Shown here: positions 28,437 through 64,000 of the stretch, in pieces | Numbering within the stretch: the stretch's first letter is position 1 | Layout: the number at the start of each line of letters is the position of its first letter | NCBI RefSeq assembly: GCF_964188315.1 | Contig: NC_135667.1 | Location: 16,306,001 to 16,370,000 of the forward strand | DNA length: 64,000 bases | Origin: Podarcis muralis | Lineage: Eukaryota | Direction: 5' to 3' | Position numbers and translations under genes: made by a program | Notes under the pieces: generated by a model | The model's database searches: none | Told to the model about the DNA's origin: nothing | What the model saw: the letters and a program-made list of their open reading frames with translations, nothing else

Positions 28437-31400
28437 TTATTCCCCTTCCTTGTCCTCTCCGTGTGTGATGACGTAGCAAATGTTCTTGTAGTCAACGTTG
28501 CCAGCTACATCTGGAGGGAAGGCGTGCCACATGTTCTTGATCTGAAAGAGGCAGAGAGGCCAAAATGAGAAGTTGCCCGATTCCTGATTCGGTTTCCCTT
28601 CCCAGGAAGCTAAAAAAAAGGTATACAGTACTCCCAAGTCAGTAAATGCATTGGTGTTATTTTCAATACAGATGTCTGAAAAGTTGGAGGGGCGGATGGG
28701 CATTCAGAAGCAGAGAAGCTGCTTGATGTCAATAACAGATTCACGATTTTACAAAGTTTTCCGCAGAACTGCAATGGCTGCTTCCATTTCCCCTCTGCCA
28801 ACCTCACCACCTCACTCTCAACTTAGTTCCGTCCTGCAATGGAATTGTAGCATTTAAACCATTGAATCACGGCACAGGCACACTGTTCTGTCCTAGGAGA
28901 GCCAGCATTTAACATTCCAGTGGCTGAGTATTTCCCTTCCTATCCAGATGAACATGAAGGCTACGACCCTAAATCCAGAAAGGACAGATAAACAGGAGTC
29001 AAGGGCAAGTCTATATAAAAGCTGCCCTTTCTGGCTGGGTGGTGTGTGGATGTGGGCTGTGAGATTATTTCGCAGTGACAGGAAAACACAATGCAAATTC
29101 TCAGAAGCCTTTCATGATGCCTTGATGTATTAACCATTAGCTTGGCAGATGAGTGGAGTGCGCAGAAGTGTACCCTTTTGTGTTTTTGGGGAAAGAGTAG
29201 CTCACAGGTGAAGAAAAATTGGTATGAAGGGGACAAGGGGGGAGCATAAAGGTGAGAAAAAGGACTGGATGTTCTGCATGATGCAAGGAAGTTCTCTTAC
29301 CTCTTCTGGGGTGAACCGGTCGCACTGGGTGGTCAGGAGTTCTTCCAAGCTGCAATGAAGCAAAGAGAGTAAGATGTTTGAGAGGGATTCCCAGGTAAGT
29401 GTGAGTCCTTTTTTAGGTGGTCTTCAAGCACTCCAGCCTCTTATTATGGAGAAGATCTGCTTCCCTGTCCCCTCCCAGTTTCACATAAGCTGAAAGCCCT
29501 CCCTGGTGGAAATATTTTTGCTTGGAAGAATGCTTTGTTCCACACACAAACATACATACAAAAGGCAACTGTTTCATAGGCAACAGAACCCTACATTTGA
29601 ATTCCATCATTGGAAGAACTTTAACCCTGCAACAGCATGCATTTAAAATTGCTATAACTCTTCCCAGGGCACTGTCATTTTATGAAAAAGGCCATGAAGC
29701 ACTAAGAAAAATCTCAAAGTCATCAGCAACGGTGGTTTGGTGAGGGTTCTGAATCCTCACAGACCTTACAGCTGCCAGAATGATTTCTGAAAGGAAGTCA
29801 TGACTATTAAACTAGTGTAAAATGAATTATATAAGTTTGTAGGATAGACAGCCAACATATCATCATCATCATTATCATCATCTGAGATGCAGCAGGATGG
29901 TTCAGACATAACAGCCTATACATGATGTCAGGTCCAAGTCCCAAGAGTGCATACTTCTTCCTCTCCAACCACAACTTGCTTTCAAATCTGAACAGACAAA
30001 CTATGGTTTGCATTTGCTTTCTAAACCACAATTGGAAATCATATTAGGAACCACATTCTGAAGTAGATTTGGAGGGCAAACACAAAACTTAAGCAAACGG
30101 GGGTTTGTTTGATCAGGTGAGTTGGGAAGGAAATGTGAGTGTGTTGGGGAGCACATGAACCCAGTGACAGCCAAGCAATGGTTTGGTGTCGCATGTTAAC
30201 CAGCGCAGCACATCTAAGGAAAGTGGTTTGTGGGGCAGATACTCACAACTGCTTCTTGACAGTGCCCTTGCCCTCAGGGTCCAGGATTTTGAAGGCGCCA
30301 ATGATTACGTCCTCGGGATCAGCACCTGGTGGGAGAAGAGGAGCCACAGTGAGATCTTGTCATCAAGCAGAGAAGAAGGAGAGATAGAACAGGGAAATAA
30401 CTTACCCTTCAGCTTCTCACCAAACATGGTGAGGAAGACAGTGAAGTTGATGGGGCCGCTGGCCTCCTTGATCATGGCATCCAGCTCCTCATTCTTCACG
30501 TTCAGGCGCCCTGCAGAGATGGGAAGGGCAGGATTATCAGCTGGGGGTGGCTTTTGAGAGTTCCATCAACAGCCAAGCTTTGCTTTCCTTCCTGCCCACC
30601 CTGCCACACTCTTTCAAGACTCCCTTTTTTCTTACCCATAGCAGCGAATGTATCTCTCAGGTCTTCCTTGTCAATGATGCCATCTCTGTTCTGGTCAATG
30701 ACAGTGAAGGCCTAGAAAGTGGGAGAGAAGCAAACATTGTGGGATTGCCGGCAATTCACCTCCAGCATTCCACCCTATCTCCCGACAAAAATGAATGTAG
30801 GATTTGTAGGGTAACTCTCCTTTGTAACAACTGTTGGATCTCGAATCTGTCCGCTCTCAAAAGGATTTCTAAAATGCGTGAACACACAGATCTGCACTGA
30901 AATTTCCAGTTCCAAAACTATATATAATACATACATGTAACTCAGCTTTAATTTAAATGGTGAGATATTGCTGGTCCTCTAAAGACCTGTTTGCACATGC
31001 ATGTTCAGCGCTTGATTCCTGCTACCTCAACTGACAGTTCTGCAGTTCTGAATAAAACACTACAGTTCAACCACCAGAGAAGAAAATGTCATACCACCTC
31101 AGAACCTGAAACACAAAACTTTTCAGGGAGTCGATTCGTAACACTCCGCTGGCAGTGACCATGTCACAAGACATGAACTTGTTTGTGTGACTGGGTTATA
31201 AGTTCATCAGTGGATGTGAGTGCAGTAGTTTTTACTGGAACCACAGATTGCTTTGTTGCTACACAATACCTATCCATTAGCAAAAGGAAGATCGCACACA
31301 CTCATGCCTGTGTTGACAGTACACATTTCAAGACCTTGGTTTCATCATGTAAATGTCCATGGCAAGGTGAACATACACCAGCCTTGAATGAACTTCCTTT

Positions 31401-34400
31401 GAAGGTTAATTTTGACTTCTGGGAAGAATATTAAAAGGAGTGTTCTGACTTATGATTTTTGCTTGAATCCAAAGTTGTGGCTATGGGATAAACAAGACCC
31501 TCTTGGAGTGTCAGTGCTGTGAACCTCTCCATCGTAGGCTCAGATTATATATATGTGTAAATAAACCCTAAATCCTAAAGACACCACCGTCTCTGCTGTG
31601 CCACATTTCCAAAAGGAAACCTGAACCCTGGGTGCCTGGAACCCCTGGAATCTCACACCACTCCGAGATTGGGGTGGCGTCTAACAAAACGTTGGCTGTG
31701 GCTGGTGGGAGTTGTACAACCTATGGGGGGCACAAGGCTACTGGCCAACAGAATGGAATACCGGTATGTTTGTGGCTTCTAACAATCGAAAAAGCTGCTG
31801 CAATGCAAGGGAGAATCAAATCCAGTCTTTATTGTTACAATCAATGGCCAGCATTGTTCAAAGAAGAATGAAACATTAACCTGGGGTCATCAAGCATTGG
31901 GCAAAAAACAGTAGTTATAGCCGCCCACTATATAATTTACTCAAGGAGGTTGCCAGACGTCTTATCTCTGGAATTTTAATGAGCTGACAGGACGGTTAAA
32001 GTTAAAGGAGTTCCAGAAAACGTGACCCAGGTTGGACCCCAAATCTCTTCACCCTCTTCCAGTCGTCTTCTATTGATGCTTATATCTAGCAATGCATTGT
32101 GGGATTGGAGAAAGACCAGCTTCCAGCACAGCACGATCCCGTTGGGCCTCTCCTCCCCCTCCTCACTTCTCTGCAGCTGTGCCCTAGAGACACCTGTCAC
32201 TTGATACCCCTCCGAGTCTCTACCAGGAATGGGAACAATCTTCTTCTGTCTCATATTAAACCCAGGGCCCCTCCCTAAGGGGACAGATGGAACATTCCAG
32301 AGGAGCTGTTGATGAGATCTCTGGAGGATAGCAGGGAGGGGAGGGGAGCTCACTCCTTCCTTGGCTCAGTCACTATTATCCTCTGGGGCTGTGTGGCGTG
32401 TCTCTTTCCCGTAAAAAAACATGGAACAACCCCCAACCCACCCGAGCTACAGTGAATGCAGAATGGAGAGGCAGAGGAGCTCCCAACACACTCTTCATTT
32501 TAAAGGCAATAATTACAATTGTGTGGTGGTAGTAATTGCCTCATCTCAGCACCTCAGCTTTGTCACTTGAGTGCTGGGGGCGAACAATCTTTTTGTATAA
32601 AAGCTGAACGTGCAGTCCTCCAAAATGGTACTCACTGAGGGGAGAAACTCTTAGCTACTCTTGGGCAGGTGTGGAGAGAGACAACGTAGCTGCCACTGCC
32701 ATAGGACAATGGAACCCAAAAAATACACCATAGCATAAGGCTGGCTATATAATTTTCCCTTATATCAAGTCAGGCCATTGAGCCACCTTAGCCAAGAGTT
32801 GCTGTTCCAACTGGAGGTGTTTCCAGACAACCTGTTTATTGAGCATTCACCCCTAATTTGTTTACAGGGAGATTAGACAAAGCTGGCTATTCAAGAAGCA
32901 TTCGTTCTGAATAGTTTGCGGGGAGTAAATGTCACCTCATACTTTCCAGTCCAGTCTCCCATCACAGTCGCAGGGTTGTTTTGAGGATAAACTGGGAGAT
33001 GGAGGCGGGTTGGGGAACAGCCATTATCGCTACCCCAAGCTGCTTAGAGGGAGGTGGTCTAGAAAGGTCATCGACAATAAATGGCCCGGCGGCCAAGGAT
33101 CAGTTCTTTTCACCAAATGTATTGATTGAAAGTGGGTTGTCATCAAAAAAGTAAAAAAGCTGAAAATGCTCATTGACCAGGATGGAGGAAAGAGAAAGGA
33201 ACAAGACTGATGGAACTCCCCAGACAGATGGAATGATAATTATTTTCCTGTTGCTCTTTTGATTTCTTTTCTCCAAATGTGAGATCTAGATGAAGGGTTT
33301 TCAGCCTTTGCAATTTTTGCTTTCATTGAGTCTGGAGCCCCACAGCTCCTCTTTCAGGCCAGTCACCCAGAATCCATCTCCAAAGATTTCCTTGTAAGGA
33401 GCTGCCGCCTGCTTCTCTGTCCAAGCGCAGATGTCACCTACCTTCTTGGTCCTCCCTCACCCAAAATAGACACTGCTGCGTCTCAAGGGTCTCAGAAAGG
33501 AAACACCGCCATTCTTGGGGTGGGGGTGGGGTGTCGAGGGGCAGCAGCGACGGCTGCGAAAGGGCAAGGGAGATCCTCTTCAAAATGGAGGGGAAGAATC
33601 TCATCCATGGGGGGGGGGGCGAGCTTCACATGGAAAGCTCTCACCGCCACCACCGCCACCACACCAGCTTCCAAGTGGAATGAACCTGGCTGGCTACTAG
33701 GAGACAGAGGGCTACTTAAATGGTGTGTAGAGGGAGAGGAAGGGGGTAGATCCACCTCAAAAAGGGTGGTGTTGAACACCTTCCAAGGCTGCAACCCTGC
33801 ACATGCTTACTTGCTCGCTGTGGGGCTTCCTTCTGAATAAACATGCCTAGGGTTGTACTGCACAACTAACTAGGTGGTGTTTGATAGTTTCAGCTCCTCT
33901 GAGGTTCTGTATCCTACAGACACCAAGGAACTTGCTTAGGATAACTTGGCCAAATTATAGCACCCATGGATTCCTTCTTCCGTTCTCCCTCCTTTAGGAA
34001 ACCCTCTAGAACTTGTAGATGTCTGCCGTTCTCAACATCTGATGAATCCTGAACAGTGAAAGGGCTAAAGTGAAGCTTGAGAAGGGAAATTAGTGAGGTC
34101 TGGGCCTCCATGTATGAAACTGGGTGGACAGAAGCTGCTCCATTTTAAAAGGTTTGATTCTATCCAATCAATCTGCCACAGATGTGTTACTTTTAAATAA
34201 TCCACAGATGAAAATTCTGGACTCTGTAGATTTCTTACGGTCAGAACATCCTTCCGCATAGCTTACTTAGGTTCTTTTCCCAATCGGGTGGTCCTCAAAA
34301 TTAAATTTCTATCCTGTTCCAAGGAGGTGATCTATAGGTTTGAGTCTGTTATTATCAGGATTATTAATAACTTTTGTATCCTTCTGATTTCTGGATGAGA

Positions 34401-37186
34401 CTTACATGCCCACAATAAAGCAGCTTCTCTCCAAACACTGAGTCTGTAATCCCGCTTTACCTTGGAGTTCAGTCCCATTAAACTCTATGGGACTTACTTC
34501 TGAGTAGATATTTATAGGATTACACCGTTGCTGTGTACACACCATACATTTAAAGCACATTTAAAGCATGCCCCACCCAATGAATCCTGGGAACTGTAGT
34601 CACCTTCATTTCTAGTACCTTGAAAAAAACATCCTTTCTGTCAATGACTTTCTCAAACATCTTCAATGAATAGTTCCAGGTAAGCTTTAAGAGCACCATA
34701 CATTACATTTCCCAGCAAGCTGCACAGTTCCCATTTTCTCCTCTTCCATTTCTTCTTAGTTTCTTACCTCTTTGAACTCCTGGATTTGTGTTTGGTCAAA
34801 CATGGAGAATACATTGGAGCTTCCTCCTTCGGCTGCTGCCCTTCTCTTTGCCTTTTTGGGTGCCTGTAATGGGTTAAAATGGGAAATCAGACCACTAAGT
34901 ACATGACCACCCGAAATGCTTATTAAGGATAGGGGACAGGGGCCGCACTTTCTGCAGGTTTCTAGAGTGTGAAATGTTGCGAGCTTGCTGAACATAGTTA
35001 AGGGGGTGGGGAGGGAAATGAAATAATTTTATACATTTCTGTCCGGGTAGGAGGGAAATGTCTGGAAGCAGTTTCTGCTCATTTTTATTTTTTTATTATT
35101 ACAGAGGGTGGGGGTTATTTTTTCAGATTCAAAACAGGATGCTACCAAACTTTCCACAGACATGGGGAGCAGGATGAAGGCCCAGGAGATTCCAAAATGC
35201 TTGGTTATGGTAGCAAAGGTTTTAAAAACTGGGAGGAAAAGAAGATCCTTTGACGAACAAACTCAGAACTTTAGATAGTGTTTGCGAAATGGCAGGAACA
35301 ACAAATGCTGCTTCAGGTGGAGGAGCTGTAATATATCATATTCAAGGTATTTCCTCAAAATCTTCAACGTATTAGTCTGAGATGCGTTTGTGAGAGTGAG
35401 TGACAGAGAGAGAGATGTGTTCAGCAAATGTAAACTAGCCTTGTGTGTCCTGCAGAAATTGCCTACATATTCTAGCTTCCAAAAATGCTTTTTATAGGTT
35501 TTGACGACTAAATAAATGAACGCTGATGAGGTTCTGGAAGATTCCGCAGATGCGGGAGAAACCGCAAAAGGCCCCAATGAAAGAGGGTTCCAGTTATTGG
35601 AATTTATCAAAGTTCACAAACTAGGCCTCCTCCTTGGAGGTTGGTTGGAGCATGAGGTTAAATGGAGCTCTAAGGAGTGTTGGCAAGGCGTACACAATTC
35701 CTTCTGAACACTCCTGCAATATATTGGTCTGGCTGATCGGATATGAACAGGGTGCACTTTGGCCTCATAAGAGATCGAAGGCAGCAAAGGAGTTTGAGCA
35801 ATAGCTGAGCTGGGTGGCAGGGTTGAGGTTTACCTAGGTAAGTGTATATGTCAAAGGATTCGGGAAATCTCTAACATACCACAGAAGATGGAGCTGACAC
35901 ACACACACAGAGACAATTAAGTTGTATCTCTTCGACTGCCACCCTATATACAATTACTTGGGTGTAAGCCCCACTGAAATCACTGGGGCTTACTTCCGGG
36001 CAGTCATACATAGGATTTCTCAGCGAATACCAATAGATGAGCCATTGATGGATTGAACAGCCAAGGGCGGCAATGGGTTATTTTTGCCTGCAATGTGTGT
36101 GAGGGGTTGCTTGGCTCGCTTGCGTGAGCAATCTGGAGTGATTGCTTCCTAAGCAGGTTTTGCAGTACACTGGCTCTCTTGTGCTAGTGACAGCCTGTGA
36201 CTTGGATCTCAAAATATGAGGGGTGTGTGTGTGTGTATTGGTGAAGTGACAAGCCACACAAGAGACTCTGAGGGCAAAAAGAAGAAAAAGCATACTCCTT
36301 GTGCTTCTTTGTTCCAAAACCAAAACTGTTCCACGGTATCCCTTGATTCCAGCTCCTTTGCTTTGGATTTTGTGGCGCCGCCAGGAATATGACTCCTGAA
36401 GCTTTTGTCTGCTCAGCAACCGCTCAGCTGCTCTTTACACACACACACACACACACACACTCTCTCTCTCTCTATTCAATATGGGGTCCAACTAATTCCC
36501 AGCTGAGTAAACTGTTCTACTGCATTATTCAAGAAAAAAGAGCATGATATGGTTATTCAGGGCCTGAAAGGATTCCCTGGTGAATTTAAAGGTGCCTAGC
36601 TCAGCAAAGGAAATAAGATCTTAAGGAAGGCTAGCCAGAAAGCAAGGAAGGATGTGAAATAATCCTATTTAACATGACATTCTGCATGCGGTTTAGGCTT
36701 CATCTTTCCCTTCCCCTCGTCAAAAGCTGTTCTTCCCAGCTGCTATCTGGCATCCCACCTCATTCAACTACCCCCAATCTCTCCTCGATTGCTCCGAGGT
36801 ATTCCCTGAACACACACATCTCTTCTGCACAGACAATAAAATGTTTAAGTGGAAAGAAACTGAAACGGAGAGATGAGACAGAGAAAGAGAGTAGTGAAGA
36901 AACCGATGAAAGGAGAAATAGGTAAGAGAAAGACCTGTATAGCACTGTTTTGGCAATGAAATAAAATTTTAGAAAATTGGTAAGGGGATTCCTCTGTCCC
37001 CCACTCTCCAACACCCAACCTCTTGGGTGTTCAGTTATGTATTTCATCTACATAACCTGAATGACCTAGTCTTCCCCTCCTATTTGAAAGAAAAGAGCTG
37101 CAGATTGATCAACCCACGTTCCATTTTATTTCCACTTTGTACATTTCCACTAGATTGAACCAGGGCACCTGCACCCCACTTACCAT
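28437..37186 (-). CDS. MYL11: Myosin regulatory light chain 11 (fast skeletal MLC2, MYLPF), 170 aa
   Basis: Exons 37186-37184 (ATG|gtaagt), 34863-34768, 30711-30636, 30510-30406, 30325-30247, 29349-29301 and 28541-28437 (513 nt). Protein [51 protein letters not shown] (EF hand) ... [17 protein letters not shown]. Confidence 0.96.
31087..31686 (+). mobile_element. Probable solo LTR in MYL11 intron 2
   Basis: TG...CA termini (tgtcatacc ... gtctaaca), a TATA-like tatatatat followed by AATAAA (~31559), and imperfect aaaa/aaac flanks. The left boundary is uncertain. Confidence 0.45.
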
Positions 37187-40977: not shown

Positions 40978-41343
40978 AAAAGGTAAAGGACCCCTGGACA
41001 GTTCAGTCTAGTCAAAGGTGACTTTGGGGTTGCTGCACTCATCTTGCTTTCTGGCTGAGACGGTCGGCGTTTGTCCGCAGACGGCTTTCCAGGTCATGTG
41101 GCCAGCATGACTAAACCACTTCTGGCGCAACGGAACACCGTGACGGGAGCCAGAGCGCATGGAAACGTTGTTTACCTTCCCGTTGCAGTGGTACCTATTT
41201 ATCTACTTGCACTGGCGTGCTTTTGAACTGCTAGGTTGGCAGGAGCTGGGACAGAGCGCCCTGCCGTGAGGATTCGAACCGCCAACCTTCTGATCGGTAA
41301 GCCCAAGAGGCTCAGTGGTTTAGACCACAGCGCCACCCGCATC
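40978..41343 (-). mobile_element. Sauria-type SINE, antisense
   Basis: aaaggtaaaggacccct tail through to the ...agaccacagcgccacccgc head on the + strand. Same subfamily as the 527 copy. Confidence 0.85.
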
Positions 41344-49000: not shown

Positions 49001-52000
49001 GGAGGAGTGAGGAAAGCTGAATACATTGTGAATCTTGCATGTGCTTGTAGTCATGTAGTACACGGTTGGTGAGCCCGGAGGCAGGAATGGATAGTGGGAA
49101 ACCACAGACGCTCTGACTGGAACCTTACCCTGTAACATTTTCTCAGGTTACGCAGGAGGAAACTGCTCCATTTCTCAATGCCCTCCCACACTCTCCTTGG
49201 TGGCCACAAACCAAGAGCAATGAGTTTGACGGAACGAAAGCTCAGTCTAGGATTTTCCCATGTGTTGAGTAGAAATTACAAAGATGGTATGTTCAGGGTA
49301 GCAAGTAGAGGGTGGCTGGCTCAGAAAGTGTTTGTTACCTGCCTGGAGGGCTTGTCCTGCCAATCCCTTTTCCTAGAAGGGTCTGGAAGAGGGGGACTCG
49401 CAGGGACCATGAAGCTGGGGAGCAAGAGAAGGACACTGGGCTGGGGGAGTTTGGTGCCGTCCCAGTGGTCCCACCTCCCCAGTGCAGCTGCATAATCTGC
49501 ATTTTTCAAAAAAGGAATTTGTAGTTGTGTCCTTTTGAAAGCTCAGAAGCTGGCCAAGAGGCTGAGGGTACCAGTATATTGCATAGCCCTTTAGCTCTTT
49601 CCATGAATGTTGTGTACTTCTTGCAAAATGAGCATAATAGGCATGTATGAAACTCATTTGGCACTGAGTAGAACTGACAACCTGTTTCTCCTTAGCTCAG
49701 TATCTGCTTCCTTATCCTTTCTTCTTCTTCTTCTTCTTCTTCTTTCCCTGCAGTGAAAGCGCCATCCCAGTGGACGTGGCCAGGCAGAGGGAACTCAAAT
49801 GGCTGGACATGTTTTCCCACTGGGACAAATGGCTGTCACGCAGATTCCAAAAGGTAAGCAGAGATCAGCTTCTGAGTACCACCTTCCCGACTGTGTAGAG
49901 GGAAAGACTCCAACTGGGATCTGAGCTTTCCTTTCTTACTGAATTTTTTAATTCCTCCATCTCATTTGCAGGTTAAATTGCGCTGCCGGAAGGGGATCCC
50001 TTCTTCTCTCCGTGCCAAAGCGTGGCAACTTCTCTCAAATAGCAAGGAGCTTCTGGATCAGAATCCAGGGAAATTTGAGGTATTTCCAAGTACCTTGTCT
50101 TGGCTGCTATGCTGATGGGAGGGTGACGTCAGGCTCTCTGTTGGGAAAAGAAGAGAGAACAAGTTTTCAGCCTTTCTCCCTCTCCATTTTGTTTTGTTTT
50201 GTTTCTTGTCTGCTTTTTTCTTAGGAATTGGAACGCCAGCCTGGAGATCCCAAATGGCTAGATGTGATTGAAAAAGACCTACACAGGCAATTCCCTTTCC
50301 ACGAGATGTTTGCAGCTCGGGGAGGCCACGGGTGAGAGAACGGAAGACGGGTGGCAGGGAATGGTTTTGCTACAGTGGCCAAAAGGAGTGTCATCTAGGG
50401 TTGGGAGGTCTCCATGCTTCTCTTGTGCACCTCCAACTCTTAGGATTGCGCTTCCTCCCTGTGTACTTGAACAATTTGCCCTCTAAGGAGCCTTAGAGGT
50501 ATTGCTTCATCCCTTCCTCTCCAGCTCCCTGTGCTGGGTGCGGACGATGGGAGTTGTAGCCCACCAGGTTGGGAAAGACTGTCAGCACTCACTCAGGTTT
50601 CAGCATTCTTCCTTCTCCTGCATCCCTTCCATCTCCCACCAGAAGTAGCACAGCCCATTGGTGGTCAGACATTCATGTCTCCCACTCTCTTTTGCCTGTC
50701 CCAGGAGCATTATAGCCTGTGCTTTCCATTGGAGGCCCAGCCCTTATTTGCGGCCTAGTCTTGAGTTAGCAGTGGCACTGCCTAGAGGCCAAAGACCTAC
50801 GTCACACCTTCCAATCCTTCCCTGAGCCTGCTGGGTCCCATTTTGAATCTGATGCCCCTTCAAGGCTAGGAGAGAGGTTCTGGATCCCTGGTCCTCACCC
50901 TTCTCTTCCGTCGCAGGCAGCAGGACCTCTACCGCATTCTGAAGGCCTACACCATCTACCGGCCAGAAGAAGGCTACTGCCAGGCACAGGCACCCGTGGC
51001 CGCGGTTTTGCTGATGCATATGCCTGCAGAGGTGAGGAGCTCCTTCATGACACTGTGTGACAGAGGGAGGGACAGCGGACACCTTGAGAATGTGGGTTCT
51101 CTGAAAAAGAAAAGGCTGGGATGTGGTGGATGAGGTTTGGGAGGAGCCGAAGTTTGTATATGCTGGGAAGAATCTTCAGCAGGGTAAGTGGGAGAGTGGA
51201 GAGCATCCTGACTCCAAAACTCTTGGGGTCTTGGTGTTGGTAAGGAGAGGGTCTTTTACACCAGGCCTACCCAGTGGTTCCTTCTCTGCTAGAAACCATT
51301 CTTTGTGCTGCTGAGGCAGTGGGCAGGGGAGCCGGCACCTTGCTCCATGCTCTCAGAGACACCTAAGAAAAGCCCTGCTGGGTCAGACCAGAGGCTTGTC
51401 TGGCCCAGAATGCTGTTCTCAGCTGCAGCCTTTTTTTCTATATGACACTGAGCATGTGCAGTGGGCTTGTTTGTTAAATTGATGATTACATCCACATCCC
51501 TTCTTTTCCCCAAGGAGCACAAGCTGATGGGGAGGCCTCCTCCCACTCCTCATTTTATCCTCACAGCAAGTAGGCTAGGCCGAGAGCTGATGACGGCCAG
51601 GCCGAGGTCACCCGGCTGAGTGGGGATTTGAACCCTGGACTCCCAGGTTCTTGCCCAGCATTTTAATCGCCAAACCAAACAGATGCCTCAGAGCCTCCAA
51701 ACTCAAACTCTAGTCTTGCAGCAATCTTTATGACTGCGCACAGGCCCTCAAGGCATGTCTACCAGGAGATAAGGGTCTGTTGGGCACTCTCTCAACCCCA
51801 CCCCCCTCTGGCAACCCTGCCACTTTTCGGCCCTGTTACTTAGTCTCAGGCCAGTTGTCAACACCCTTACATTGCCCAACGTAGAAATATAGCCATGGTA
51901 TTTCAGCAGGATTTATAAGGCCCACAGCAATCCATCGGTAGTGCCTTGTTTATTCATCTCCAGTGGAAGTCAAGGGCTGTAGCTCAGCAGCTGAGCACCT

Positions 52001-52709
52001 GCTTTGCATGCAGAAGGTCGCAGGTTGAATCCTTGACTCCTCAAGGTAGGCCTGGGAAATACTCCCTTCCTGCAGCCATGCAGAGCCACTGCCGGTCAGC
52101 GTAGATAATGCTGTGCTAGATAGACCAATGGTCCGACCCAATATAACGCAGCTTCCTTTGTTCTTCTTTTTGGACGTTGGTTGCTTGTGTGCCACCTGCA
52201 CAGTACTGCAAAGGATATATGGCAGCCAGAACAGAGGAGGTAACTCTCTGAGCTGTCCTTCCTGAATGCACTAGTAGGGGTTTATTGCATGCAATGAACT
52301 AGTGGAAGGACTGCCTTAGCCTGGAGGGTATGACTGCCCAGGTTATCAGTGTTGAGAGTTTCTGTTTCTCTGTCTCTTCAGCAAGCTTTCTGGTGCCTGG
52401 TGCAAATCTGTGAGAAATACCTCCCTGGCTATTACAGCGCTGGACTGGTGAGTACGGCTGTGGTCCTGTGAGGAAGGGCAGTAGGTCCAGGGCATTTCCA
52501 CAGAGCTTCTTTACGGGGAAATGTCTTCTGCACTCTTCAAAAAACACACACTAATGAATAGACGTTTCCCCCCACTACTACTTCACTGGAATGTCTGCTT
52601 AGCAGTGTCCTGCAAGAACCGCCCAGTATCTTCCTGTTCTCTACTTTTCTGGAGAGGAATGAGACTTGCCCTCCTGGGAAAGGACGGGAGGCTTGTAGTC
52701 TGGTAACAT

Positions 52710-52751
<42 letters not shown>

Positions 52752-55700
52752 TGCATAATTATACACCTGCCTGCTCTTTCCTCACTTTCATTTCCCTGTT
52801 AGGGCCAGTTTATCGGACTAGCTTTTTAAGGGTTTGTTTTCCAACCTGTTTCACTTCTCCCTTCATCCTTCCTCCAGTCAAACCTGGAACTTGCCCTCCC
52901 ACCCCCTGCCACCACGGATCACCGGTCCGGAGAGCGAGCTCACCTTGGGCTCAAGTCGCCGACTTCTTCTTTTCCCAGCCCATTACAATGGGCTGAATTA
53001 TAATTTTAACTGGGCAGCGAGTGCCGTTTTAGAAGAGGTGTTCCCTTCAGTGGTGGAAATACAACTTCTCTGATCTTGCCTGTCGTGATGTGTGTGCATC
53101 CTCTCGAAACAAAGGAAAGATGCCCTTTCCCCTTTGGAACTGTTTTTATTATTATTATTATTCAGCTGCGTGTATATGCAGGGAGAGTTGCTTTTTAAAA
53201 ATGTGTGCAATTAAGCAACACATTTCTTTAAACCAGGTGACTGCTTAAAAGTGGGCCCACAGTGGAAAAAATATCAGGGTGAAAGAGAGTTAAAAGTGAA
53301 TTAAATCATATGAACAACAGAGCTAAAGAGGAATCAGTGGCTAACTGTATGTCTTGAGTCTTTCGTTACCCCATCCCACTAGAGCAGGGGTGACTAACCC
53401 CAGGCGCTCTAGCTTGCTGTTGGACTACATCTCCCACCTCTCCTGACCATTGGCCATGTTGAGTGGTGCTGATGGGAACTGGATCTCCAGCAGCATCTTG
53501 GGGGGGGGGGCACAGATTTCCCATCCCTGTTTTATATGGACAGAGACTGTGCTTTTAAACAACTGCCAAGCAGGCAAAAATCAACAGGTGAAGGGCCCTG
53601 GCTTGGTGGTAGAACACCTTCTTTGCTAGCAGAAGGTCCCAGGTATAATCCCCTGGTATCTCCAGGTGGGGCTGGGAGGGACGCCTGCTTGAATCCTGGC
53701 AACCTACTGTAGGCAGGACTAAGCCAGATGGGCTCAGTTAAAGGCAGATTCCTATGTTTGTTTCATGCTGGGGGAAGCTTTATTTCTGCCTTATATACAG
53801 CCATTAGTCACAGAACATTTATCCATTAAAAATATGGCAATTCTTCTAGCTCCATGCAGCCTTAAGCTGTGGTCCATGGGACCACTTCAGGCCTGCCTAG
53901 TTACTGTCTCTGACTTTCCTGTCCCTCTGTACTTCTCTGCTGCTTTCAGACCTGATAACTACTTTCAGGGTCTGAAATCAGGCCTCTCAGGCTGCTTTTT
54001 GGCTTCTTTGTTCTCCCATGTGTGTTGAATCAAAGGTGAACTGTTCCAGAGGCTCTGCAGACACCATCTTGGTAGTCAAGATAATCCTGCAAATAATTGG
54101 TAGTTGTTGTAGCAGCAGCAGCAGCAGCAGTGAGCTCATATACGTATATATTCATTTGCTTTGATACAGGCTAATTGGCTTCATTATCTGTGGGCTTGGG
54201 GTTCTGGGCTCTGAGCCCAGAAAGGGGAACCAGCTGTGAGATTTTGGTATTTGCCATGATGGAGCCACGATGGGAAGTCATGGCCAGAGTGACAAATGCT
54301 GCTTTGTGTATAAAGGTTGTATAAACCTTTGCTTGGGTGTGGACAAGCCACCTCCTTCCTGCCGTGTCTGCATCTGTAAAGGCTGGGAGACCTGGCTAGC
54401 TGATTTGCTAAAGTCTACACCTTTCTTTTAATAAAGCACTCTGGGATCTTTTACCATCCTTCTTTGGTATTCCTCAGGGTGGATTTGATTTAAATCAAAT
54501 CGATTTAAACCACACTTTAAATCACTAGTCAGTAAGATTTGATTTAAATCACTAGTTAGTAAGACTTGATTTAAATCATAATTTACAGAAAGACTCATTC
54601 TTGCTGGTATGATCTTAATATTTACAACAAGATGAAGGTTTCATTTTTGGAATAATAAATTTTCAGAGTAGTTTTTACAGTTATATCAAAAATTACTGAT
54701 TTGGTTATACTATTAGAAATACGTTGACAGATAATTATGAAATTATTGTGAGGTTTAATAAGTTAACTGTTTATATTTGGACAACTTTTCTGCTGTACTT
54801 TATTGGAAGGAGAAAATCATTTCCTTAATAACAATTTAAACAATTTTTTAAACTAAACAATAACATTATAGCATAAGTATCCATGTTTGTTAACTGATGT
54901 GGTTAAACGGGTTTTTTTTTAAACACCTTAGACTGAGTTTTAGCACGCATGAAAAACTTAAAACAAATCCTTATTTCCTGATGAATAGCCTTTGGGCTAT
55001 AATGTAACTTAAATAGAAAACTATCTTTAGAAGGATTTTTCCTCCAAAAGCAATTTATTTTAAAAATCCAATTTAAATAAATTTAAATTTAAAAAATCCA
55101 ATTTAAATAAAAAACAACCATGATTTTCAATTATTTTTATCCACCTTGGTATTCCTGCACCCAACCACTCCCACAAGCCCTCCTTTGGGCTGGTACAGCA
55201 GGATACAATGAAAAGGAGAAAGGTGAAAATAGCGGGGAGGGGAAATACAGGGTTGGTGATTCCCCTTCCTCCCAGTGCTCCTCTCATCCCAGAGGTTTCT
55301 TGTGCTTCCTGCGCAGGAGGCGATTCAGTTGGACGGGGAGATCTTCTTTGCCCTGCTGCGCCGAGCGTCTCCCATTGCCTACCGCCACCTGAAAAGGTAC
55401 AAGGTCGACCCCATCTTGTACATGACGGAGTGGTTCATGTGCATCTTCTCCCGGACCTTGCCCTGGTGCTCTGTGCTACGCGTCTGGGACATGTTCTTCT
55501 GTGAAGGTGAGGCTTCTTCCTTGGTCCTCACTCGCTTTCTCACTGCCAGGCCTTGGGTGTCTTGATTACATAGTGTCTGCATCCCCCCCCCCCCCTTAAG
55601 CCGACCCAATCAGGAGGGAAAGATACAAGAACAACGGCACTTTCTGCTATAAATTGGATCCTCTCCTTTGGCTTTTCTTTTGAACTGCCTTTCCATCACT

Positions 55701-57896
55701 GAATCAGAAGGGTGACTCCTGAGCCCTTGCTTACCTGGTTATTACAAACTCCACTTGTGTAGTCTCCTTTTTTAAAAAGCTTATCCCCATCTCGCAGAGG
55801 ATGATGGGATTCCTGGCCTCATACGACAGGCATCCCCAAATGCGACCTTCCAAATGTTTTGGGACTGCAACTCCCATCATCCCTAGCTAACAGAACCAGT
55901 GGTCAGGGATGATGGGAATTATAGTCCCAAAACATCTGGAGGGCTGAGTTTGGGGGTGCCTGTCATACAATGTGTCAAGCTCCTTCCTTCCCCCACACCC
56001 CCAACCACTGAGTGATCCTTCTCTCCCACTTGCAGGGGTGAAGATAATCTTCCGTGTGGGTCTAGTGCTGCTCCGGAACACGCTGGGCTCAGTAGACAAG
56101 CTGCGCTCCTGCCAAGGCATGTACGAGACGATGGAGAAACTAAGGAACCTGCCTGTTGATACCATGCAAGAGAACTTCCTTGTCCAGGAGGTGAGAAACA
56201 GGTCGTAAGGGCAGAGTTCTAAGCGGAGAACAAGGAGTCTTGGATTCTGCACCAAGGATGAGTTACTGCATGATATCCGTCAGGCAGAAAGCTAGTTGGG
56301 AAAGTAGTCAGGATGCACAGGGCAGGGGAAGGCAGAAGGCAGATTGGGGTCAATTGTTTGATTTCTAGATGATCTGCAAATCTGCCCTCCTCTGGTGTAG
56401 AGAATGCAAATTATCAAAGGGATATCAGCTTTAAAGAAGGGACGATCCACAGTGTCCATATTTATTCAAATAAACATGAACTGAAGATACAAATGCACTC
56501 AAAATCCTAAAGTAAGATAATTGAGGAAGGGAGCTTAAATGAGCTCATAAAAGTAGACTGTCTCCAGATTTGGTGGAAAGTGCTTTAAGAAATCTGCTAA
56601 TCACATGCTTCCAGTGACAAATTACATGGAGTTCAGGTTTTGGGGAGGGTGGGTAGGCTGCTTCTCCCTCAACTTTTAAAATGGTTTTGATTTTATTTTT
56701 TTCATACAACCAAAATCTGCCTGGGCAGGCTGTGAGTTGGGAGTGGAGGAAGGGCAAACGGGGAGGTTCTGCCTAACCCTTCCCCTTCATGTTTGTCAGT
56801 ATCTAATCGCCCTCCACCAGGCCCTTTTTTGCCTGCACATGGGTAAAGTCCCGGATCCTGGTATTCCCCCAAATGCAGATTATAAGGTGGCATGGCGGAA
56901 GTTGATTGGACCATAGCGGAAAAGGTTAAGCAGCCTTTCTCTGCTTTCCCAGGCTGATTTGAAAGCGAGAGAGAGAGAAACCACAGAGGGAAGAAACCAG
57001 GAACTCCACATGGCAAGTGGTTTCCATTGCAGCTGTGACGTAGCCTTGCCCAGGCCCTGCCTTTGTTTTGTGTGGGCCGGGAGATGTTACACATACGAGG
57101 GGGCTGCTGAGACAGGGGTGGATGCTGAGTGTGGCGGATATTGGTGAAAGATGCCACGTGGCTATTCCTCTTGCGCTTGCTTTTGTCCCAGGTGATTAAC
57201 CTCCCGGTGACGGAAGCTCTTGTGGAGCGGGAGAACGCCACACAGCTGAAGAAATGGCGGGAGACGCGGGGAGAGCTGCAGTACAAGCCCTCCCGCCGGT
57301 TGCATGGCTCGCGGGCCATCCATGAGGAAAGCCACCGCATGAACCCGCCCTTGAGCGCCAGCGCCAGCCTTTTGAGCCTCACCGGCCTGAGGCAGAGGGT
57401 TGCCATTGGCAGTACCAGCGGCCCCTCCTTCTCCCCAGCGCACACGGTGGGCTCCTTGGCCGTGTCGGCTGTCCCCACTCCGGCTCCTCCCGCCGCCCAG
57501 AGCCAGGTGGTGGTGTCCGAAGGCCTCCACGCGGCCTTGCCGTCCCCGACCGGGAACAACATGCCGCTCGGGGGCCCCCCCAGGAAAGCGGGGGGCAGCA
57601 GCAAGGAGGAGAGGCGGAAAGAGAAGGAGCGCGAGAGGCAGGAGAAGCTGGAGAAGGAGCGGCAGAAGCAGGAGAAGGAGCGGGAGCGGAAGCTGCAGAA
57701 GGAGCGGGAGAAGCAGGAGAAGGAGCGGGAGAAGAAGCAGCAGAGGGAGCGAGCCAAAGAGGAGGCCAAGCTAAAGAAGGAGAGGAAGTTGTCGCTGAGG
57801 AAAAAGGAACCCAAGTCAGCCCCTCCGCCGCCCGCTGAGGAGGGGAAGGAGGGGGGATCCTCAGGGGCGTCCGTGGTACAAAGCACACACTTTTGA
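43050..57896 (+). CDS. TBC1D10B: TBC1 domain family member 10B (Rab GAP), ~805 aa
   Basis: Exons 43050-43921, 49754-49853, 49972-50079, 50225-50331, 50917-51031, 52382-52447, 55317-55506, 56036-56190 and 57192-57896 (2418 nt, all GT-AG). Contains [18 protein letters not shown] (R finger) and YCQAQ (Q finger), with a long low-complexity N-terminus and a K/E/R coiled-coil tail. Adjacent and divergent to MYL11, as in mammals. Confidence 0.95.
45410..45560 (-). mobile_element. MIR/L2-type SINE remnant
   Basis: caacaaccgtgtgaggtagg...gactggccccaggtcacc...ggggttttgaaccctgatcttccagg...cttaaccactacac is the reverse of the 10643-type head and core. Confidence 0.6.
47778..48138 (+). mobile_element. 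Sauria-type SINE with ~13-bp TSD
   Basis: Nearly identical to the 4410 copy. Flanks are ctatgaaatgcag and ctacgaaatgcag. Confidence 0.9.
51973..52160 (+). mobile_element. tRNA-derived SINE (Squam3-like)
   Basis: gggctgtagctcagcagctgagcacctgctttgcatgcagaaggtcgcaggttgaatcc head with the same body as 11345. Confidence 0.75.
52711..52746. repeat. (CAG)12 trinucleotide repeat in TBC1D10B intron 6
   Basis: Read directly from the sequence; lies between exons 52447 and 55317. Confidence 0.95.
53592..53760 (+). mobile_element. tRNA-derived SINE (Squam3-like), degenerate
   Basis: gcttggtggtagaacaccttctttgctagcagaaggtcccaggtataatcccctgg... is similar to the other copies. Confidence 0.6.
54475..55148. 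mobile_element. AT-rich non-autonomous hAT element with perfect 8-bp TSD
   Basis: TIRs cagggtggat / atccaccttg. TSD gtattcct at 54467-54474 and 55149-55156. Multiple subterminal gatttaaatc repeats. Confidence 0.88.
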
Positions 57897-62878: not shown

Positions 62879-62884
62879 TTTATT
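62879..62884 (-). terminator. Likely polyadenylation signal of the PHETA-like gene
   Basis: AATAAA on the minus strand ~170 nt after the stop codon. Confidence 0.55.
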
Positions 62885-63052: not shown

Positions 63053-63673
63053 CTACTCAAAATCAATCAAGGACTCATTCCCTGACTGCTGCTTGACTTG
63101 CTTCTCCTGCCACTTCCGCCTCAGCCTCAAAATATCTTCTCCAAATTGCTGGTGGAGCTGGACAAAACCCATGGTTAAGGGACCAGCTTCCACCGCCGGT
63201 TTTGTAGTGGGGAGTTTCAAGTCTCTTGCCAAGTGTCTCGGTTGTCCTTCACATTTGGGAGGTTGCTGGTGCTTCAGCATCTGAAACTGTCCCTCCAGCT
63301 CCGTCACCAAAGCTCGGAGGTAACAGAAGCCTGCCGTACTGAGAGCTCGCACCCAACCCTCCATGGTTTCTTGGCTCTCGGCCGCCATTTTGTAGGATCG
63401 GGCCCCAGGTACGCCATTGGGGTAGGAAATCTCAAAGGTGTGGGGTTCAGATGCAGACTCCTGCAGCTCCACGGTGCAGCCTTCCAGGATGATGAGCCGG
63501 AGAGGACCCCGATCTCCCGATTGGTCTCGGCAGAAGAGGATATTGCCCCAGAGCTCGCACCAGCATGGCCGGTAGGAGGCTGTGCGGATGCTCTTCTTGT
63601 ACAGCAATCCCTGCCGGTCTGGGAGATGCCTCAGGTGGGAAGATGCGAGAGCACTGGAGAGGTGGAGTTTCAT
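63053..63673 (-). CDS. Sesquipedalian/PHETA (IPIP27/FAM109)-family PH-domain adaptor, 206 aa, single coding exon; paralog identity uncertain
   Basis: Acceptor ttttacag at 63687/63686 and Kozak gtccgccATG. The PH domain contains GLLYKK, IILEGCTVEL and AAESQETMEGWVRALS, followed by the helix YLRALVTELEGQF and a C-terminal F&H motif FVQLHQQFGEDI. This matches the recalled Ses1/Ses2 architecture. Confidence 0.88.
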   Translation of the reverse strand: MKLHLSSALASSHLRHLPDRQGLLYKKSIRTASYRPCWCELWGNILFCRDQSGDRGPLRLIILEGCTVELQESASEPHTFEISYPNGVPGARSYKMAAESQETMEGWVRALSTAGFCYLRALVTELEGQFQMLKHQQPPKCEGQPRHLARDLKLPTTKPAVEAGPLTMGFVQLHQQFGEDILRLRRKWQEKQVKQQSGNESLIDFE

Positions 63674-64000
63674 GGCGGACAGAACCCTGTAAAATGAGGG
63701 GTGAAATTATGATGGACGACTGGTGGCGGTGAATGGAACAGGTGGGCATGTCAGGAAAGTACAGGTGATAATGGGCCCAGAAAAGGAGCTGCAGATATAG
63801 AACGGGGGGGGGGGGGGGGGGAGAGAGAGAGAGAGAGAGAAATGAGGGAGAGTGTGGAATAACTTAGGGATGGACTGAAAGGGAATAAGAAAAAATGAAG
63901 CAAAGCACATGAAAAAAGGGATCACGATTTTGAAGGGGAGATGAAAGATCTCTGGCTGTGTACACATCTTACATTTAAAGCGCAAGCGCGCACACACACA

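What the first reader, a model, noticed from the sequence alone, without database searches (positions are those of the whole stretch)
63053..63673. Apparent third PHETA/Sesquipedalian paralog at the MYL11-TBC1D10B locus
Seen in the sequence: an intact 206-aa PH + helix + F&H (FVQLHQQFGEDI, 63166-63131) ORF with Kozak context, splice acceptor and poly(A) signal. Established knowledge: humans have two family members, PHETA1 (12q24, near MYL2/SH2B3/ATXN2) and PHETA2 (22q13, beside SEPTIN3). They bind the Lowe-syndrome phosphatase OCRL and INPP5B through the F&H motif. I know of no PHETA gene next to TBC1D10B in human 16p11.2, which is the MYL11/SH2B1/ATXN2L paralogon. Inference: this is a whole-genome-duplication ohnolog retained in reptiles and lost in humans. 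Its PH domain is divergent (SYRPCWCELWGNILFC versus the recalled YHRRWFVLRGNMLFY).
Basis: partly seen in the sequence, partly recalled or inferred. Interest (0 to 1): 0.7.

Follow-up and report, generated by a model that had tools for sequence, protein, structure and literature searches.

The report
Third, ancient PHETA gene in lizards
This lizard gene is an intact member of a third, very old branch of the PHETA (Sesquipedalian) family of adaptors for the Lowe-syndrome phosphatase OCRL; sharks, fishes, some amphibians, turtles and lizards keep it, no mammal, bird, crocodilian or frog copy was found, and no searched paper names it.

Summary
Window 63053-63673 (-) is an intact 206-aa ORF with a PH domain (Pfam 4.7e-14), a following helix, a 13-residue F&H motif, a C-terminal LIDFE, an upstream AG and an AATAAA 168 nt after the stop.

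- **Annotation:** about 30 squamates and 8 turtles carry orthologs, labelled "sesquipedalian-1-like".
- **Position:** in Podarcis and Pelodiscus the gene lies between CD2BP2 and TBC1D10B.
- **Tree:** a careful tree places it in a gnathostome-wide clade B (99/97). That clade holds second PHETA genes of sharks, coelacanth, lungfish, bichir, paddlefish, gar, teleosts, a caecilian and a salamander. It is separate from clade A, which holds PHETA1 and PHETA2.
- **Three genes in squamates:** they also have PHETA1, and PHETA2 at the NAGA-SMDT1-NDUFA6 locus.
- **Linkage:** clade B sits beside mylpf in striped bass and beside a light-chain-sized EF-hand gene in a shark. This mirrors MYL2-PHETA1 on human 12q24.
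- **Topology tests:** nesting inside amniote PHETA1 (p 0.007) or PHETA2 (p 0.029) is rejected. A position as sister to all of clade A is not rejected (p 0.23).
- **Selection:** dN/dS is 0.2-0.3.
- **Gaps in distribution:** I found no mammal, bird, crocodilian or frog member.

Zebrafish "pheta2" probably belongs to this clade; I did not test that directly. Expression was not tested. No searched paper describes the lineage.

The parts
63053..63673 (-). Complete coding sequence (206 codons plus TAG) of the clade-B PHETA / 'sesquipedalian-1-like' gene, in one exon
   Evidence: ORF list. 96% identical to the Podarcis raffonei protein P0001. dN/dS 0.28 against P. raffonei and 0.22 against Pelodiscus.
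63335..63616 (-). PH domain, residues 20-113
   Evidence: Pfam PF00169, E 4.7e-14. AlphaFold2 strands 20-97 and helix 101-112 with pLDDT about 90. Foldseek matches to GRP1 PH.
63269..63325 (-). Helix after the PH domain, residues 117-135. In human PHETA1/2 this region is the predicted coiled coil used for dimerisation.
   Evidence: AlphaFold2 helix 117-135. Family-wide conservation of Y118 and L126. Dimerisation of the human proteins is from PMC3046058.
63131..63169 (-). F&H motif, 13 residues GFVQLHQQFGEDI (169-181): F at position 2, H at 6, F at 9
   Evidence: F170 and H174 invariant in 54 sequences; the motif is intact in 21/21 squamates and 6/6 turtles. Motif requirements are from PMC6743453.
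63056..63070 (-). C-terminal LIDFE, residues 202-206, which fits the clathrin-box pattern
   Evidence: L[ILVM][DEN][FLWIM] occurs within the last 14 residues in 18/21 squamates, 6/6 turtles and 12/13 other clade-B proteins. It occurs in 0/9 clade A, 0/2 cyclostomes and 0/3 invertebrates.
63687..63688 (-). Putative 3' splice site (AG after a pyrimidine-rich run), 14 nt before the ATG. The 5' exon would lie beyond the end of the window.
   Evidence: Read from the sequence. In-frame TAA at 63709 upstream of it. Not tested with RNA.
62879..62884 (-). AATAAA poly(A) signal, 168 nt after the stop
   Evidence: Pattern search. Not tested with RNA.
50870..57893 (+). Context: 3' part of TBC1D10B, convergent with the PHETA-like gene. 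Exon ORFs at 50870-51130 and 55260-55562; last-exon ORF 57129-57893.
   Evidence: Pfam RabGAP-TBC 6.9e-10 and 7.9e-19. Colinear at 95% with the P. raffonei locus, whose 805-aa RabGAP-TBC gene ends there.
28440..34830 (-). Context: MYL11 (skeletal myosin regulatory light chain) exons
   Evidence: Motif hits. Best PDB matches are skeletal RLC / MYL11, E 1e-17.

Best explanation
This is a functional gene with a single coding exon. It encodes a short member of a third, gnathostome-wide lineage of the PHETA/Sesquipedalian family, called clade B here.

Origin (inferred from tree and synteny): the lineage split from the PHETA1+PHETA2 lineage before sharks and bony vertebrates diverged. It stayed in the MYL11 / TBC1D10B / CD2BP2 neighbourhood, the counterpart of the MYL2-PHETA1-SH2B3-ATXN2 neighbourhood. 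The split most likely arose in the early vertebrate genome duplications. The gene was later lost in mammals, and apparently also in archosaurs and frogs.

Mechanism (inferred, not shown): the protein works like PHETA1/2.
- The C-terminal F&H helix docks on the ASH-RhoGAP-like domain of the inositol 5-phosphatases OCRL and INPP5B.
- The PH domain and the following helix provide dimerisation and membrane or partner contacts.
- The C-terminal LIDF(E), specific to clade B, binds the clathrin terminal domain, so the adaptor-phosphatase complex is tied directly to clathrin-coated membranes.

The reptile proteins are a trimmed version. They have lost the long linker with the SPKLWP[KR]R motif that other clade-B proteins carry. 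Squamates have also replaced the two arginines before the invariant Trp of strand beta-2.
For: - Intact ORF, PH domain and predicted fold.
- Orthologs with an intact frame in about 30 squamates and 8 turtles.
- Purifying selection: dN/dS 0.28 and 0.22. The first 151 residues are identical to P. raffonei although synonymous sites differ by 6%.
- Same slot between CD2BP2 (GYF domain) and TBC1D10B in Podarcis and in the turtle Pelodiscus.
- IQ-TREE with LG+C20 on 57 sequences: vertebrates 100/100, clade A 100/99, gnathostome clade B 99/97 including the window's protein. An all-representatives FastTree gives the same split.
- Named clade-B members: Heterodontus, Carcharodon, Latimeria, Protopterus, Polypterus, Polyodon and sturgeons, Lepisosteus, several teleosts, Rhinatrema, Pleurodeles.
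- Gar, bichir and coelacanth each hold one clade-A and one clade-B gene. The gar clade-A gene lies beside SH2B3.
- In striped bass the clade-B gene lies 3 kb from mylpf; window MYL11 exons match at 74-83%.
- In Heterodontus a 161-aa EF-hand gene lies 3.4 kb away.
- AU tests reject nesting in amniote PHETA1 (p 0.007) or PHETA2 (p 0.029).
- Squamate PHETA2 exists at NAGA-SMDT1-NDUFA6, and squamate PHETA1 exists.
- Signature columns: the reptile gene shares the two derived clade-B states (L122, aromatic 130) and the C-terminal LIDx tail. It shares none of the clade-A derived states (H35, S54).
- The F&H motif meets the published requirements.
- Human 12q24 gene order MYL2-CUX2-PHETA1-SH2B3-ATXN2 comes from PMC12898128.
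Against: - The branch leading to the reptile proteins is long (0.94, plus 0.77 for squamates).
- The AU test does not reject a tree that joins them to clade A as a whole (delta lnL 8.7, p 0.23). Membership of clade B therefore leans on synteny and on a few signature characters as much as on the tree.
- No neighbours could be seen within 10 kb in the caecilian, bichir, gar or Carcharodon.
- The shark EF-hand neighbour could not be checked at sequence level because no DNA was returned.
- Transcription, splicing, OCRL binding and clathrin binding are all untested.
- The acidic last residue of the clathrin-box pattern is often G or S in other species, and colubroid snakes have eroded the motif.
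- Absence from birds, crocodilians and frogs rests on protein databases. It could reflect gaps in GC-rich parts of assemblies.
Confidence: 0.75

Rival explanations
1. It is an old third lineage, but it arose by a local or segmental duplication before the gnathostome radiation, not by whole-genome duplication. The resemblance between neighbourhoods is partial or coincidental.
For: I verified only a few linked pairs: MYL11 with clade B, SH2B3 with PHETA1, and the 12q24 order from a paper. I made no chromosome-scale paralogon analysis. Lamprey and hagfish proteins join clade B only weakly (90/48), so the timing relative to 1R/2R is open.
Against: The myosin light chain gene and the PHETA gene are each duplicated and remain linked in both copies. 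ATXN2/ATXN2L and SH2B3/SH2B1 lie on the same two human regions (established knowledge; part of it). This is the usual signature of ohnologs.
Confidence: 0.13
2. The sauropsid gene is not orthologous to the fish, shark and amphibian clade B. It is a separate, fast-evolving offshoot near the base of clade A that happens to lie in the MYL11 region.
For: The AU test does not reject reptile gene + clade A as one clade (p 0.23). The stem branch is long. The reptile proteins lack the SPKLWP[KR]R motif of the other clade-B proteins.
Against: The free tree gives 99/97 for clade B and 94/95 for the subclade with sharks and amphibians. Linkage to MYL11 is shared with bass and probably with a shark. The C-terminal LIDx tail is shared and absent from all clade A proteins, and so are derived L122 and aromatic 130. 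No other clade-B gene was found in any reptile, so this reading needs a loss and a gain in the same place.
Confidence: 0.07
3. It is a reptile-specific duplicate or retrocopy of PHETA1 or PHETA2, or one of those genes moved to a new place.
For: PHETA coding sequences lie in a single exon, so a retrocopy would look the same. NCBI names the gene 'sesquipedalian-1-like'.
Against: AU tests reject both placements (p 0.007 and 0.029). PHETA1 and PHETA2 are both present in squamates, PHETA2 at its conserved locus. The gene keeps ancestral states (Q35 in turtles, D54) that all of clade A has changed.
Confidence: 0.03
4. It is an untranscribed or decaying ORF with no function.
For: The PH domain is unusually divergent in squamates.
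Against: The frame is intact in about 40 species spanning more than 250 million years. dN/dS is 0.2-0.3. The PH domain is identical between two lacertids despite 6% synonymous change. The F&H motif is intact in 27/27 reptiles.
Confidence: 0.02

Closest known systems
PHETA1 (Sesquipedalian-1, IPIP27A, FAM109A)
   Same: N-terminal PH domain, following helix, C-terminal F&H helix (F at position 2, H at 6, aromatic at 9, G at 10), coding sequence in one exon, and a location beside a myosin regulatory light chain gene in a paralogous region.
   Different: 38-45% identity. The lizard protein lacks the PPPxPPRR PACSIN2-binding motif and most of the proline-rich linker. It carries a C-terminal LIDFE that PHETA1 lacks. 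It lies beside TBC1D10B/CD2BP2 rather than SH2B3/CUX2. It falls in a separate clade, and the AU test rejects nesting (p 0.007).
PHETA2 (Sesquipedalian-2, IPIP27B, FAM109B)
   Same: Same architecture. Both lack PPPxPPRR. Both carry Cys instead of Arg just before the invariant Trp of strand beta-2 (RCW in Lutra and Crotalus PHETA2, PCW in squamate clade B).
   Different: PHETA2 lies at NAGA-SMDT1-NDUFA6, also in a snake that has the clade-B gene as well. It groups in clade A with PHETA1 (100/99). It has no C-terminal LIDx. The AU test rejects a joint clade (p 0.029).
Fish, shark and amphibian 'sesquipedalian-1-like' genes (clade B), probably including zebrafish pheta2 (zgc:153733)
   Same: Same clade (99/97), same C-terminal LIDF/LIDL tail, same linkage to mylpf/MYL11, no PPPxPPRR.
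   Different: These proteins are 220-330 aa with a long linker holding a conserved SPKLWP[KR]R motif, which the reptile proteins have lost. Their PH domain keeps RRWFVLKGN. I had no zebrafish pheta2 sequence, so its membership is inferred.
APPL1 and Frabin/FGD4 (other F&H-motif partners of OCRL)
   Same: They share the short helical F&H peptide that binds the OCRL ASH-RhoGAP-like domain.
   Different: Their domain architectures are unrelated (BAR-PH-PTB; DH-PH-FYVE), and there is no homology outside the motif.

Membership tests
PHETA / Sesquipedalian family | N-terminal PH domain | tested here: met
   Pfam PF00169, E 4.7e-14. AlphaFold2 PH fold with pLDDT about 90. Foldseek match to GRP1 PH, E 6e-8.
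PHETA / Sesquipedalian family | Full-length sequence homology to Sesquipedalian proteins, beyond the generic PH domain | tested here: met
   Hits named sesquipedalian at E 1e-30 (sharks) to 1e-131. The alignment covers the PH domain, the helix and the F&H motif. The protein lies inside the vertebrate PHETA clade, 100/100.
PHETA / Sesquipedalian family | [quoted passage not shown] | tested here: met
   GFVQLHQQFGEDI lies in predicted helix 170-195. The criteria are from PMC6743453.
PHETA / Sesquipedalian family | Physical binding to the ASH-RhoGAP-like domain of OCRL or INPP5B | not testable with these tools
   Needs a pull-down or co-IP with F170A/H174A mutants and the OCRL W739A control.
PHETA1 orthologs | PPPxPPRR PACSIN2-binding motif and a location beside SH2B3/CUX2 | tested here: not met
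   No such motif in the 206 aa. The neighbours are TBC1D10B and CD2BP2. AU p 0.007.
PHETA2 orthologs | Location at NAGA-SMDT1-NDUFA6 and grouping with mammalian Sesquipedalian-2 | tested here: not met
   A separate PHETA2 sits at that locus in Crotalus. AU p 0.029.
Clade B ('third PHETA lineage', defined here) | Groups with the second PHETA gene of sharks, ray-finned and lobe-finned fishes and amphibians | tested here: met
   99/97 in IQ-TREE. Caveat: the alternative that joins it to clade A as a whole is not rejected (p 0.23).
Clade B ('third PHETA lineage', defined here) | Linkage to MYL11/mylpf | tested here: met
   The window holds MYL11 28 kb away. In bass, mylpf lies 3 kb away. In a shark, an EF-hand gene of 161 aa lies 3.4 kb away, not verified by sequence.
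Clade B ('third PHETA lineage', defined here) | LIDF/LIDL at the extreme C-terminus | tested here: met
   36 of 40 clade-B proteins have it, against 0 of 14 others.
Clathrin-box proteins | L-hydrophobic-x-hydrophobic-[DE] in a disordered region (pattern from established knowledge, recalled) | tested here: met
   LIDFE lies in the disordered tail, pLDDT below 50.
Clathrin-box proteins | Physical binding to the clathrin heavy-chain terminal domain | not testable with these tools
2R ohnologs | The paralogs lie in paralogous chromosome regions that trace to one pre-duplication region | tested here: inconclusive
   The MYL2/MYL11 and PHETA1/clade-B pairs are linked. Both clades are present in sharks and bony vertebrates. 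I made no chromosome-scale or amphioxus comparison.

The most novel reading that the evidence does not exclude
Jawed vertebrates ancestrally had three PHETA adaptors, not two. The third ('PHETA3') is marked by its own C-terminal clathrin box and lies beside MYL11. It gives OCRL, and above all INPP5B (which has no clathrin-binding motif of its own), a direct link to clathrin coats. Mammals lost it. Zebrafish 'pheta2', used with pheta1 to model human PHETA1/2 deficiency, is this gene and has no human ortholog. True PHETA2 is then absent from zebrafish.
Probability: 0.45. Interest if true: 0.6.

Novelty: new member of a known kind. Interest (0 to 1): 0.45.

Why it matters
PHETA1 and PHETA2 are treated as the complete vertebrate set of PH-domain adaptors for OCRL, the Lowe-syndrome / Dent-2 phosphatase, and for INPP5B. 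The zebrafish study of the family searched for further paralogs and reported none. It also noted that zebrafish pheta2 shares no synteny with human PHETA2 (PMC7272357).

A third lineage as old as jawed vertebrates, with its own clathrin-box tail, would explain that missing synteny. The zebrafish double knock-out would then remove PHETA1 and a gene that humans lack, not PHETA1 and PHETA2. This matters when the renal and craniofacial phenotypes are carried over to patients.

It also offers a natural experiment. One can ask how OCRL and INPP5B are coupled to clathrin in animals that keep or lack this adaptor. In evolutionary terms it is an ordinary case of differential ohnolog loss.

Tried and rejected
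- **Expression:** Transcription, the splice acceptor and the poly(A) site stay untested.
- **Synteny in large genomes:** the caecilian, bichir, gar and Carcharodon clade-B genes have no called neighbour within the 10-kb flanks. The coelacanth protein is not on record.
- **Profile-based word search:** it returned almost only fish PHETA1 in its 120 listed rows and gave no tetrapod PHETA1/2. The exhaustive representative search solved this.
- **Apparent mammalian hits to the turtle query** (rabbit, golden mole): inspection showed short PHETA1 proteins with PPPxPPRR, not clade B.
- **Catfish 'sesquipedalian-1-like' P0355:** I first took it for clade B. It is an extra clade-A copy beside a DDR kinase.
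- **Zebrafish pheta2:** I had no sequence. Paper searches for its neighbours (mylpfa) found nothing.
- **Literature:** Pirruccello et al. 2011 is not held. Searches for PHETA3, FAM109C and 'sesquipedalian-1-like' returned no paper.
- **NCBIfam:** no hit, as expected for a library of bacterial and archaeal proteins.
- **Spliced neighbours:** MYL11, TBC1D10B and the septin were searched exon by exon, by reference.
- **Human DNA:** none was searched or fetched.
Full report
**1. Observation**

Window 63053-63673 on the minus strand is an ATG-to-TAG ORF of 206 codons.
- Pfam finds a PH domain at residues 20-113 (E 4.7e-14).
- An AlphaFold2 model, built on a 54-sequence alignment, has mean pLDDT 73, and about 90 over the PH core. 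It shows a seven-stranded PH fold with its capping helix, a second helix at 117-135, a disordered stretch at 140-165, a helix at 170-195 and a disordered tail.
- Foldseek's best PDB matches are GRP1 and cytohesin PH domains.
- The start context is tccgccATGa. An in-frame TAA lies 12 codons upstream. An AG preceded by a pyrimidine-rich run lies 14 nt before the ATG. AATAAA lies 168 nt after the stop.

Whether the AG and the poly(A) signal are used could not be tested.

- MYL11 exons at about 28.4-34.8 kb (-). The best PDB matches are skeletal myosin regulatory light chain / MYL11.
- RabGAP-TBC exons at 50.9 and 55.3 kb (+).
- A septin exon at 9.0 kb.

These spliced genes were searched exon by exon, by reference.

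**2. What the gene is**

The word-index protein search returns about 30 squamate proteins at 55-96% identity. The best is Podarcis raffonei at 96%. It also returns turtle proteins at 52-53%. Nearly all are named "sesquipedalian-1-like" by NCBI. A turtle query adds five more turtles but no bird or crocodilian.

The window is colinear with the P. raffonei locus at 92-95% nucleotide identity, so it comes from a closely related lacertid. In P. raffonei and in the turtle Pelodiscus, the gene sits between CD2BP2 (GYF domain) and the 3' end of TBC1D10B, convergent with the latter. The position is therefore at least as old as the split between turtles and squamates.

The gene is under purifying selection.
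- Against P. raffonei there are 8 synonymous and 8 non-synonymous differences, dN/dS 0.28. All amino-acid changes fall after residue 151.
- Against Pelodiscus dN/dS is 0.22, with dS saturated.

**3. Place in the family**

I ran an exhaustive HMMER search of 1.84 billion cluster representatives with a family profile. I judged it justified because the claim rests on which relatives exist. It gave 150 representatives.

A FastTree of these and a careful IQ-TREE (LG+C20+F+G4, 57 sequences, invertebrate outgroup) agree.
- Vertebrate proteins form one clade (100/100), which splits in two.
- Clade A (100/99) holds PHETA1 of sharks, chimaera, coelacanth, gar, bichir, zebrafish, frogs, turtles, crocodile, Rhineura and mammals. 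It also holds Sesquipedalian-2 of platypus, otter and Crotalus.
- Clade B (99/97) holds the window's protein with the other squamates and turtles.
- Cluster look-ups name the other clade-B members: two sharks (Heterodontus, Carcharodon), a caecilian, a salamander, a second coelacanth gene, lungfish, a second bichir gene, paddlefish and sturgeons, a second gar gene, and teleosts (cod relatives, striped bass, sea bass, medaka, a killifish relative).
- Lamprey and hagfish join clade B only weakly (90/48).

Both clades contain sharks and bony vertebrates, so the split predates crown gnathostomes.

**4.

- Forcing the ten reptile proteins into one clade with amniote PHETA1 costs 40.3 log-likelihood units (p-AU 0.007).
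- Forcing them together with the three PHETA2 proteins costs 39.9 units (p-AU 0.029).
- Squamates also have the other two genes. Rhineura has sesquipedalian-1 (P0163). Crotalus adamanteus has sesquipedalian-2 (P0267), flanked by NAGA (melibiase domains) and NDUFA6 (Complex1_LYR). Its model is fused to SMDT1 (DDDD domain). These are exactly the neighbours of human PHETA2 given in PMC7272357.

The gene is therefore a third paralog, not a moved PHETA1 or PHETA2.

One caveat remains. A tree that joins the reptile proteins to clade A as a whole is not rejected (delta lnL 8.7, p-AU 0.23). The reptile stem branch is long (0.94). Even in that tree the gene would be an old third lineage, but its orthology to the fish and shark clade B would then rest on other evidence.

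**5. Evidence independent of the tree**

(a) Synteny.
- In striped bass the clade-B gene lies 3 kb upstream of a 170-aa EF-hand gene. Its exons match the window's MYL11 exons at 74-83% identity, including the C-terminal exon.
- In the shark Heterodontus a 161-aa EF-hand gene lies 3.4 kb from the clade-B gene. No DNA was returned, so its identity is unverified.
- The gar clade-A gene lies beside SH2B3.
- Human 12q24 reads MYL2-CUX2-PHETA1-SH2B3-ATXN2 (PMC12898128).

Both PHETA lineages thus sit beside paralogous myosin light chain genes. This is the expected signature of ohnologs.

(b) C-terminal tail. A LIDF/LIDL tail occurs in 18/21 squamates, 6/6 turtles and 12/13 other clade-B proteins. It occurs in none of 9 clade-A, 2 cyclostome or 3 invertebrate proteins.

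(c) Signature columns. Among the eight columns that separate clade A from the non-reptile clade B, the reptile proteins carry the two derived clade-B states (L122, aromatic 130). They carry none of the derived clade-A states (H35, S54). The two columns where they agree with clade A hold ancestral states.

**6. Likely mechanism (inferred)**

Published work defines the F&H motif as a 13-residue helix. F at position 2 and H at position 6 are indispensable, and position 9 holds a bulky hydrophobic residue (PMC6743453). GFVQLHQQFGEDI meets all three and lies in a predicted helix. The motif is intact in 27 of 27 reptile orthologs.

- By homology, the protein should bind the ASH-RhoGAP-like domain of OCRL and INPP5B. 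In human PHETA1, F224A abolishes this binding (PMC3046058).
- The helix after the PH domain matches the predicted coiled coil through which the human proteins form homo- and heterodimers.
- The C-terminal LIDFE fits the clathrin-box pattern L-hydrophobic-x-hydrophobic-[DE] (recalled knowledge) and lies in a disordered tail.
- INPP5B lacks clathrin binding (PMC3046058). An adaptor with its own clathrin box could therefore give INPP5B access to coated membranes. This is speculation.

The last acidic residue of the pattern is not conserved across species, and colubroid snakes have degraded the motif.

**7. Divergence of the reptile proteins**

- Other clade-B proteins are 220-330 aa and carry a conserved SPKLWP[KR]R motif in a long linker. 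Turtles and squamates have lost the motif and most of the linker.
- In the PH domain, the sauropsid stem changed WFVL to WCEL.
- Squamates also replaced the two arginines before the invariant Trp; 19 of 21 have Cys or Tyr at the second one.
- In the HMMER alignment to cytohesin, that second arginine matches the beta-2 arginine I recall as essential for phosphoinositide binding in GRP1.
- PHETA2 of otter and rattlesnake also has Cys there. The change is therefore compatible with a working OCRL adaptor and need not mean a new function.

**8. Distribution and loss**

I found no clade-B protein from a mammal, bird, crocodilian or frog, either among the named clade-B representatives or in the two word searches. 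Mammalian hits to the turtle query proved to be short PHETA1 proteins.

- Loss in mammals agrees with the well-annotated human and mouse gene sets (established knowledge).
- For archosaurs and frogs, absence from protein databases is weaker evidence.
- I searched no human or other mammalian DNA for remnants.

**9. Zebrafish**

PMC7272357 reports the following:
- exactly two zebrafish genes;
- pheta1 lies beside sh2b3;
- pheta2 (chr3:32.82 Mb) is more divergent, lacks PPPxPPRR and shares no synteny with human PHETA2;
- a search for further paralogs found none.

In my tree zebrafish Pheta1 (P0059, 256 aa) is in clade A. Every ray-finned lineage I sampled has a clade-B gene. The extra clade-A copy of catfish keeps PPPVPPRR, so it is not of the Pheta2 type. 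I infer, at roughly 85%, that zebrafish pheta2 is a clade-B gene and not the ortholog of human PHETA2. I had no zebrafish Pheta2 sequence, so this is untested.

**10. Novelty and verdict**

Gene models exist under an uninformative automatic name. One turtle ortholog is mislabelled "sperm-associated antigen 8". No paper in the searched library mentions PHETA3, FAM109C or "sesquipedalian-1-like", and the family literature speaks of two vertebrate members.

The finding is a new, unrecognised subfamily of a known family. It is an ordinary pattern of differential ohnolog loss. It does bear on how a zebrafish disease model is read, and it points to a testable clathrin link. Interest is moderate.

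Two earlier notes of this scan on the same window were used. One flagged the LIDFE ending, and I tested its conservation. The other, on DCTPP1, served only as a landmark.

Noticed in passing
window 60243-60356; L002:13225-13329: A 116-bp non-coding stretch between the PHETA-like gene and the 3' end of TBC1D10B is 79% identical between this lizard and the turtle Pelodiscus. It may be a conserved regulatory or 3'-UTR element.
   Followed up: no
window 527-878, 4405-4768, 17692-18044, 40981-41338, 47778-48140: An interspersed repeat of about 360 bp with at least five copies in the window. Copies are 72-94% identical to copies in the Podarcis raffonei locus.
   Followed up: no
P0253, P0220, P0227, P0340, P0249, P0188 (clade-B proteins of shark, gar, teleosts, salamander): A conserved linker motif, SPKLWP[KR]R (SPKMWAKR in the salamander), marks non-reptile clade-B proteins. 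It is absent from clade A and from turtles and squamates. Its partner is unknown.
   Followed up: partly
P0021, P0022, P0025, P0028, P0030, P0034, P0351 (colubroid snakes): The C-terminal LIDF/LIDL is degraded in advanced snakes (SLMHF, SLMPFE, NSMHFK), while Python keeps SLIHFE. The clathrin-box-like tail is therefore not under uniform constraint.
   Followed up: partly
L009 (Crotalus adamanteus), gene 10001-21349: The 'sesquipedalian-2' model P0267 carries a DDDD (SMDT1/EMRE) domain and a frame-shifted-looking C-terminus. It looks like a read-through fusion of PHETA2 with SMDT1 in the annotation.
   Followed up: no
L007/L008 (Clarias gariepinus), gene 10001-10747: Catfishes have an extra clade-A PHETA copy (P0355, with PPPVPPRR) beside a discoidin-domain receptor kinase gene. 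It is probably a teleost-duplication copy of pheta1.
   Followed up: partly
P0031 (Platysternon megacephalum): The turtle ortholog of this gene is named 'sperm-associated antigen 8' in NCBI and UniRef, an evident mislabel.
   Followed up: no
window 9020-9360 (+): Septin exons with the GESGLGKST and DTPGFGD motifs (Pfam Septin 6e-7), presumably SEPTIN1. The window thus holds septin, DCTPP1, MYL11, TBC1D10B and the PHETA-like gene.
   Followed up: partly
window 63800-63835 (-): A (CT)n run followed by about 17 C lies just upstream of the gene, inside the presumed last intron.
   Followed up: no
P0049, P0050, P0051 (invertebrate Sesquipedalian proteins): Invertebrate family members carry an internal SLIDF / LIDI just after the coiled-coil helix. 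A clathrin-box-like motif may therefore be ancestral to the family and merely relocated or retained in clade B.
   Followed up: no
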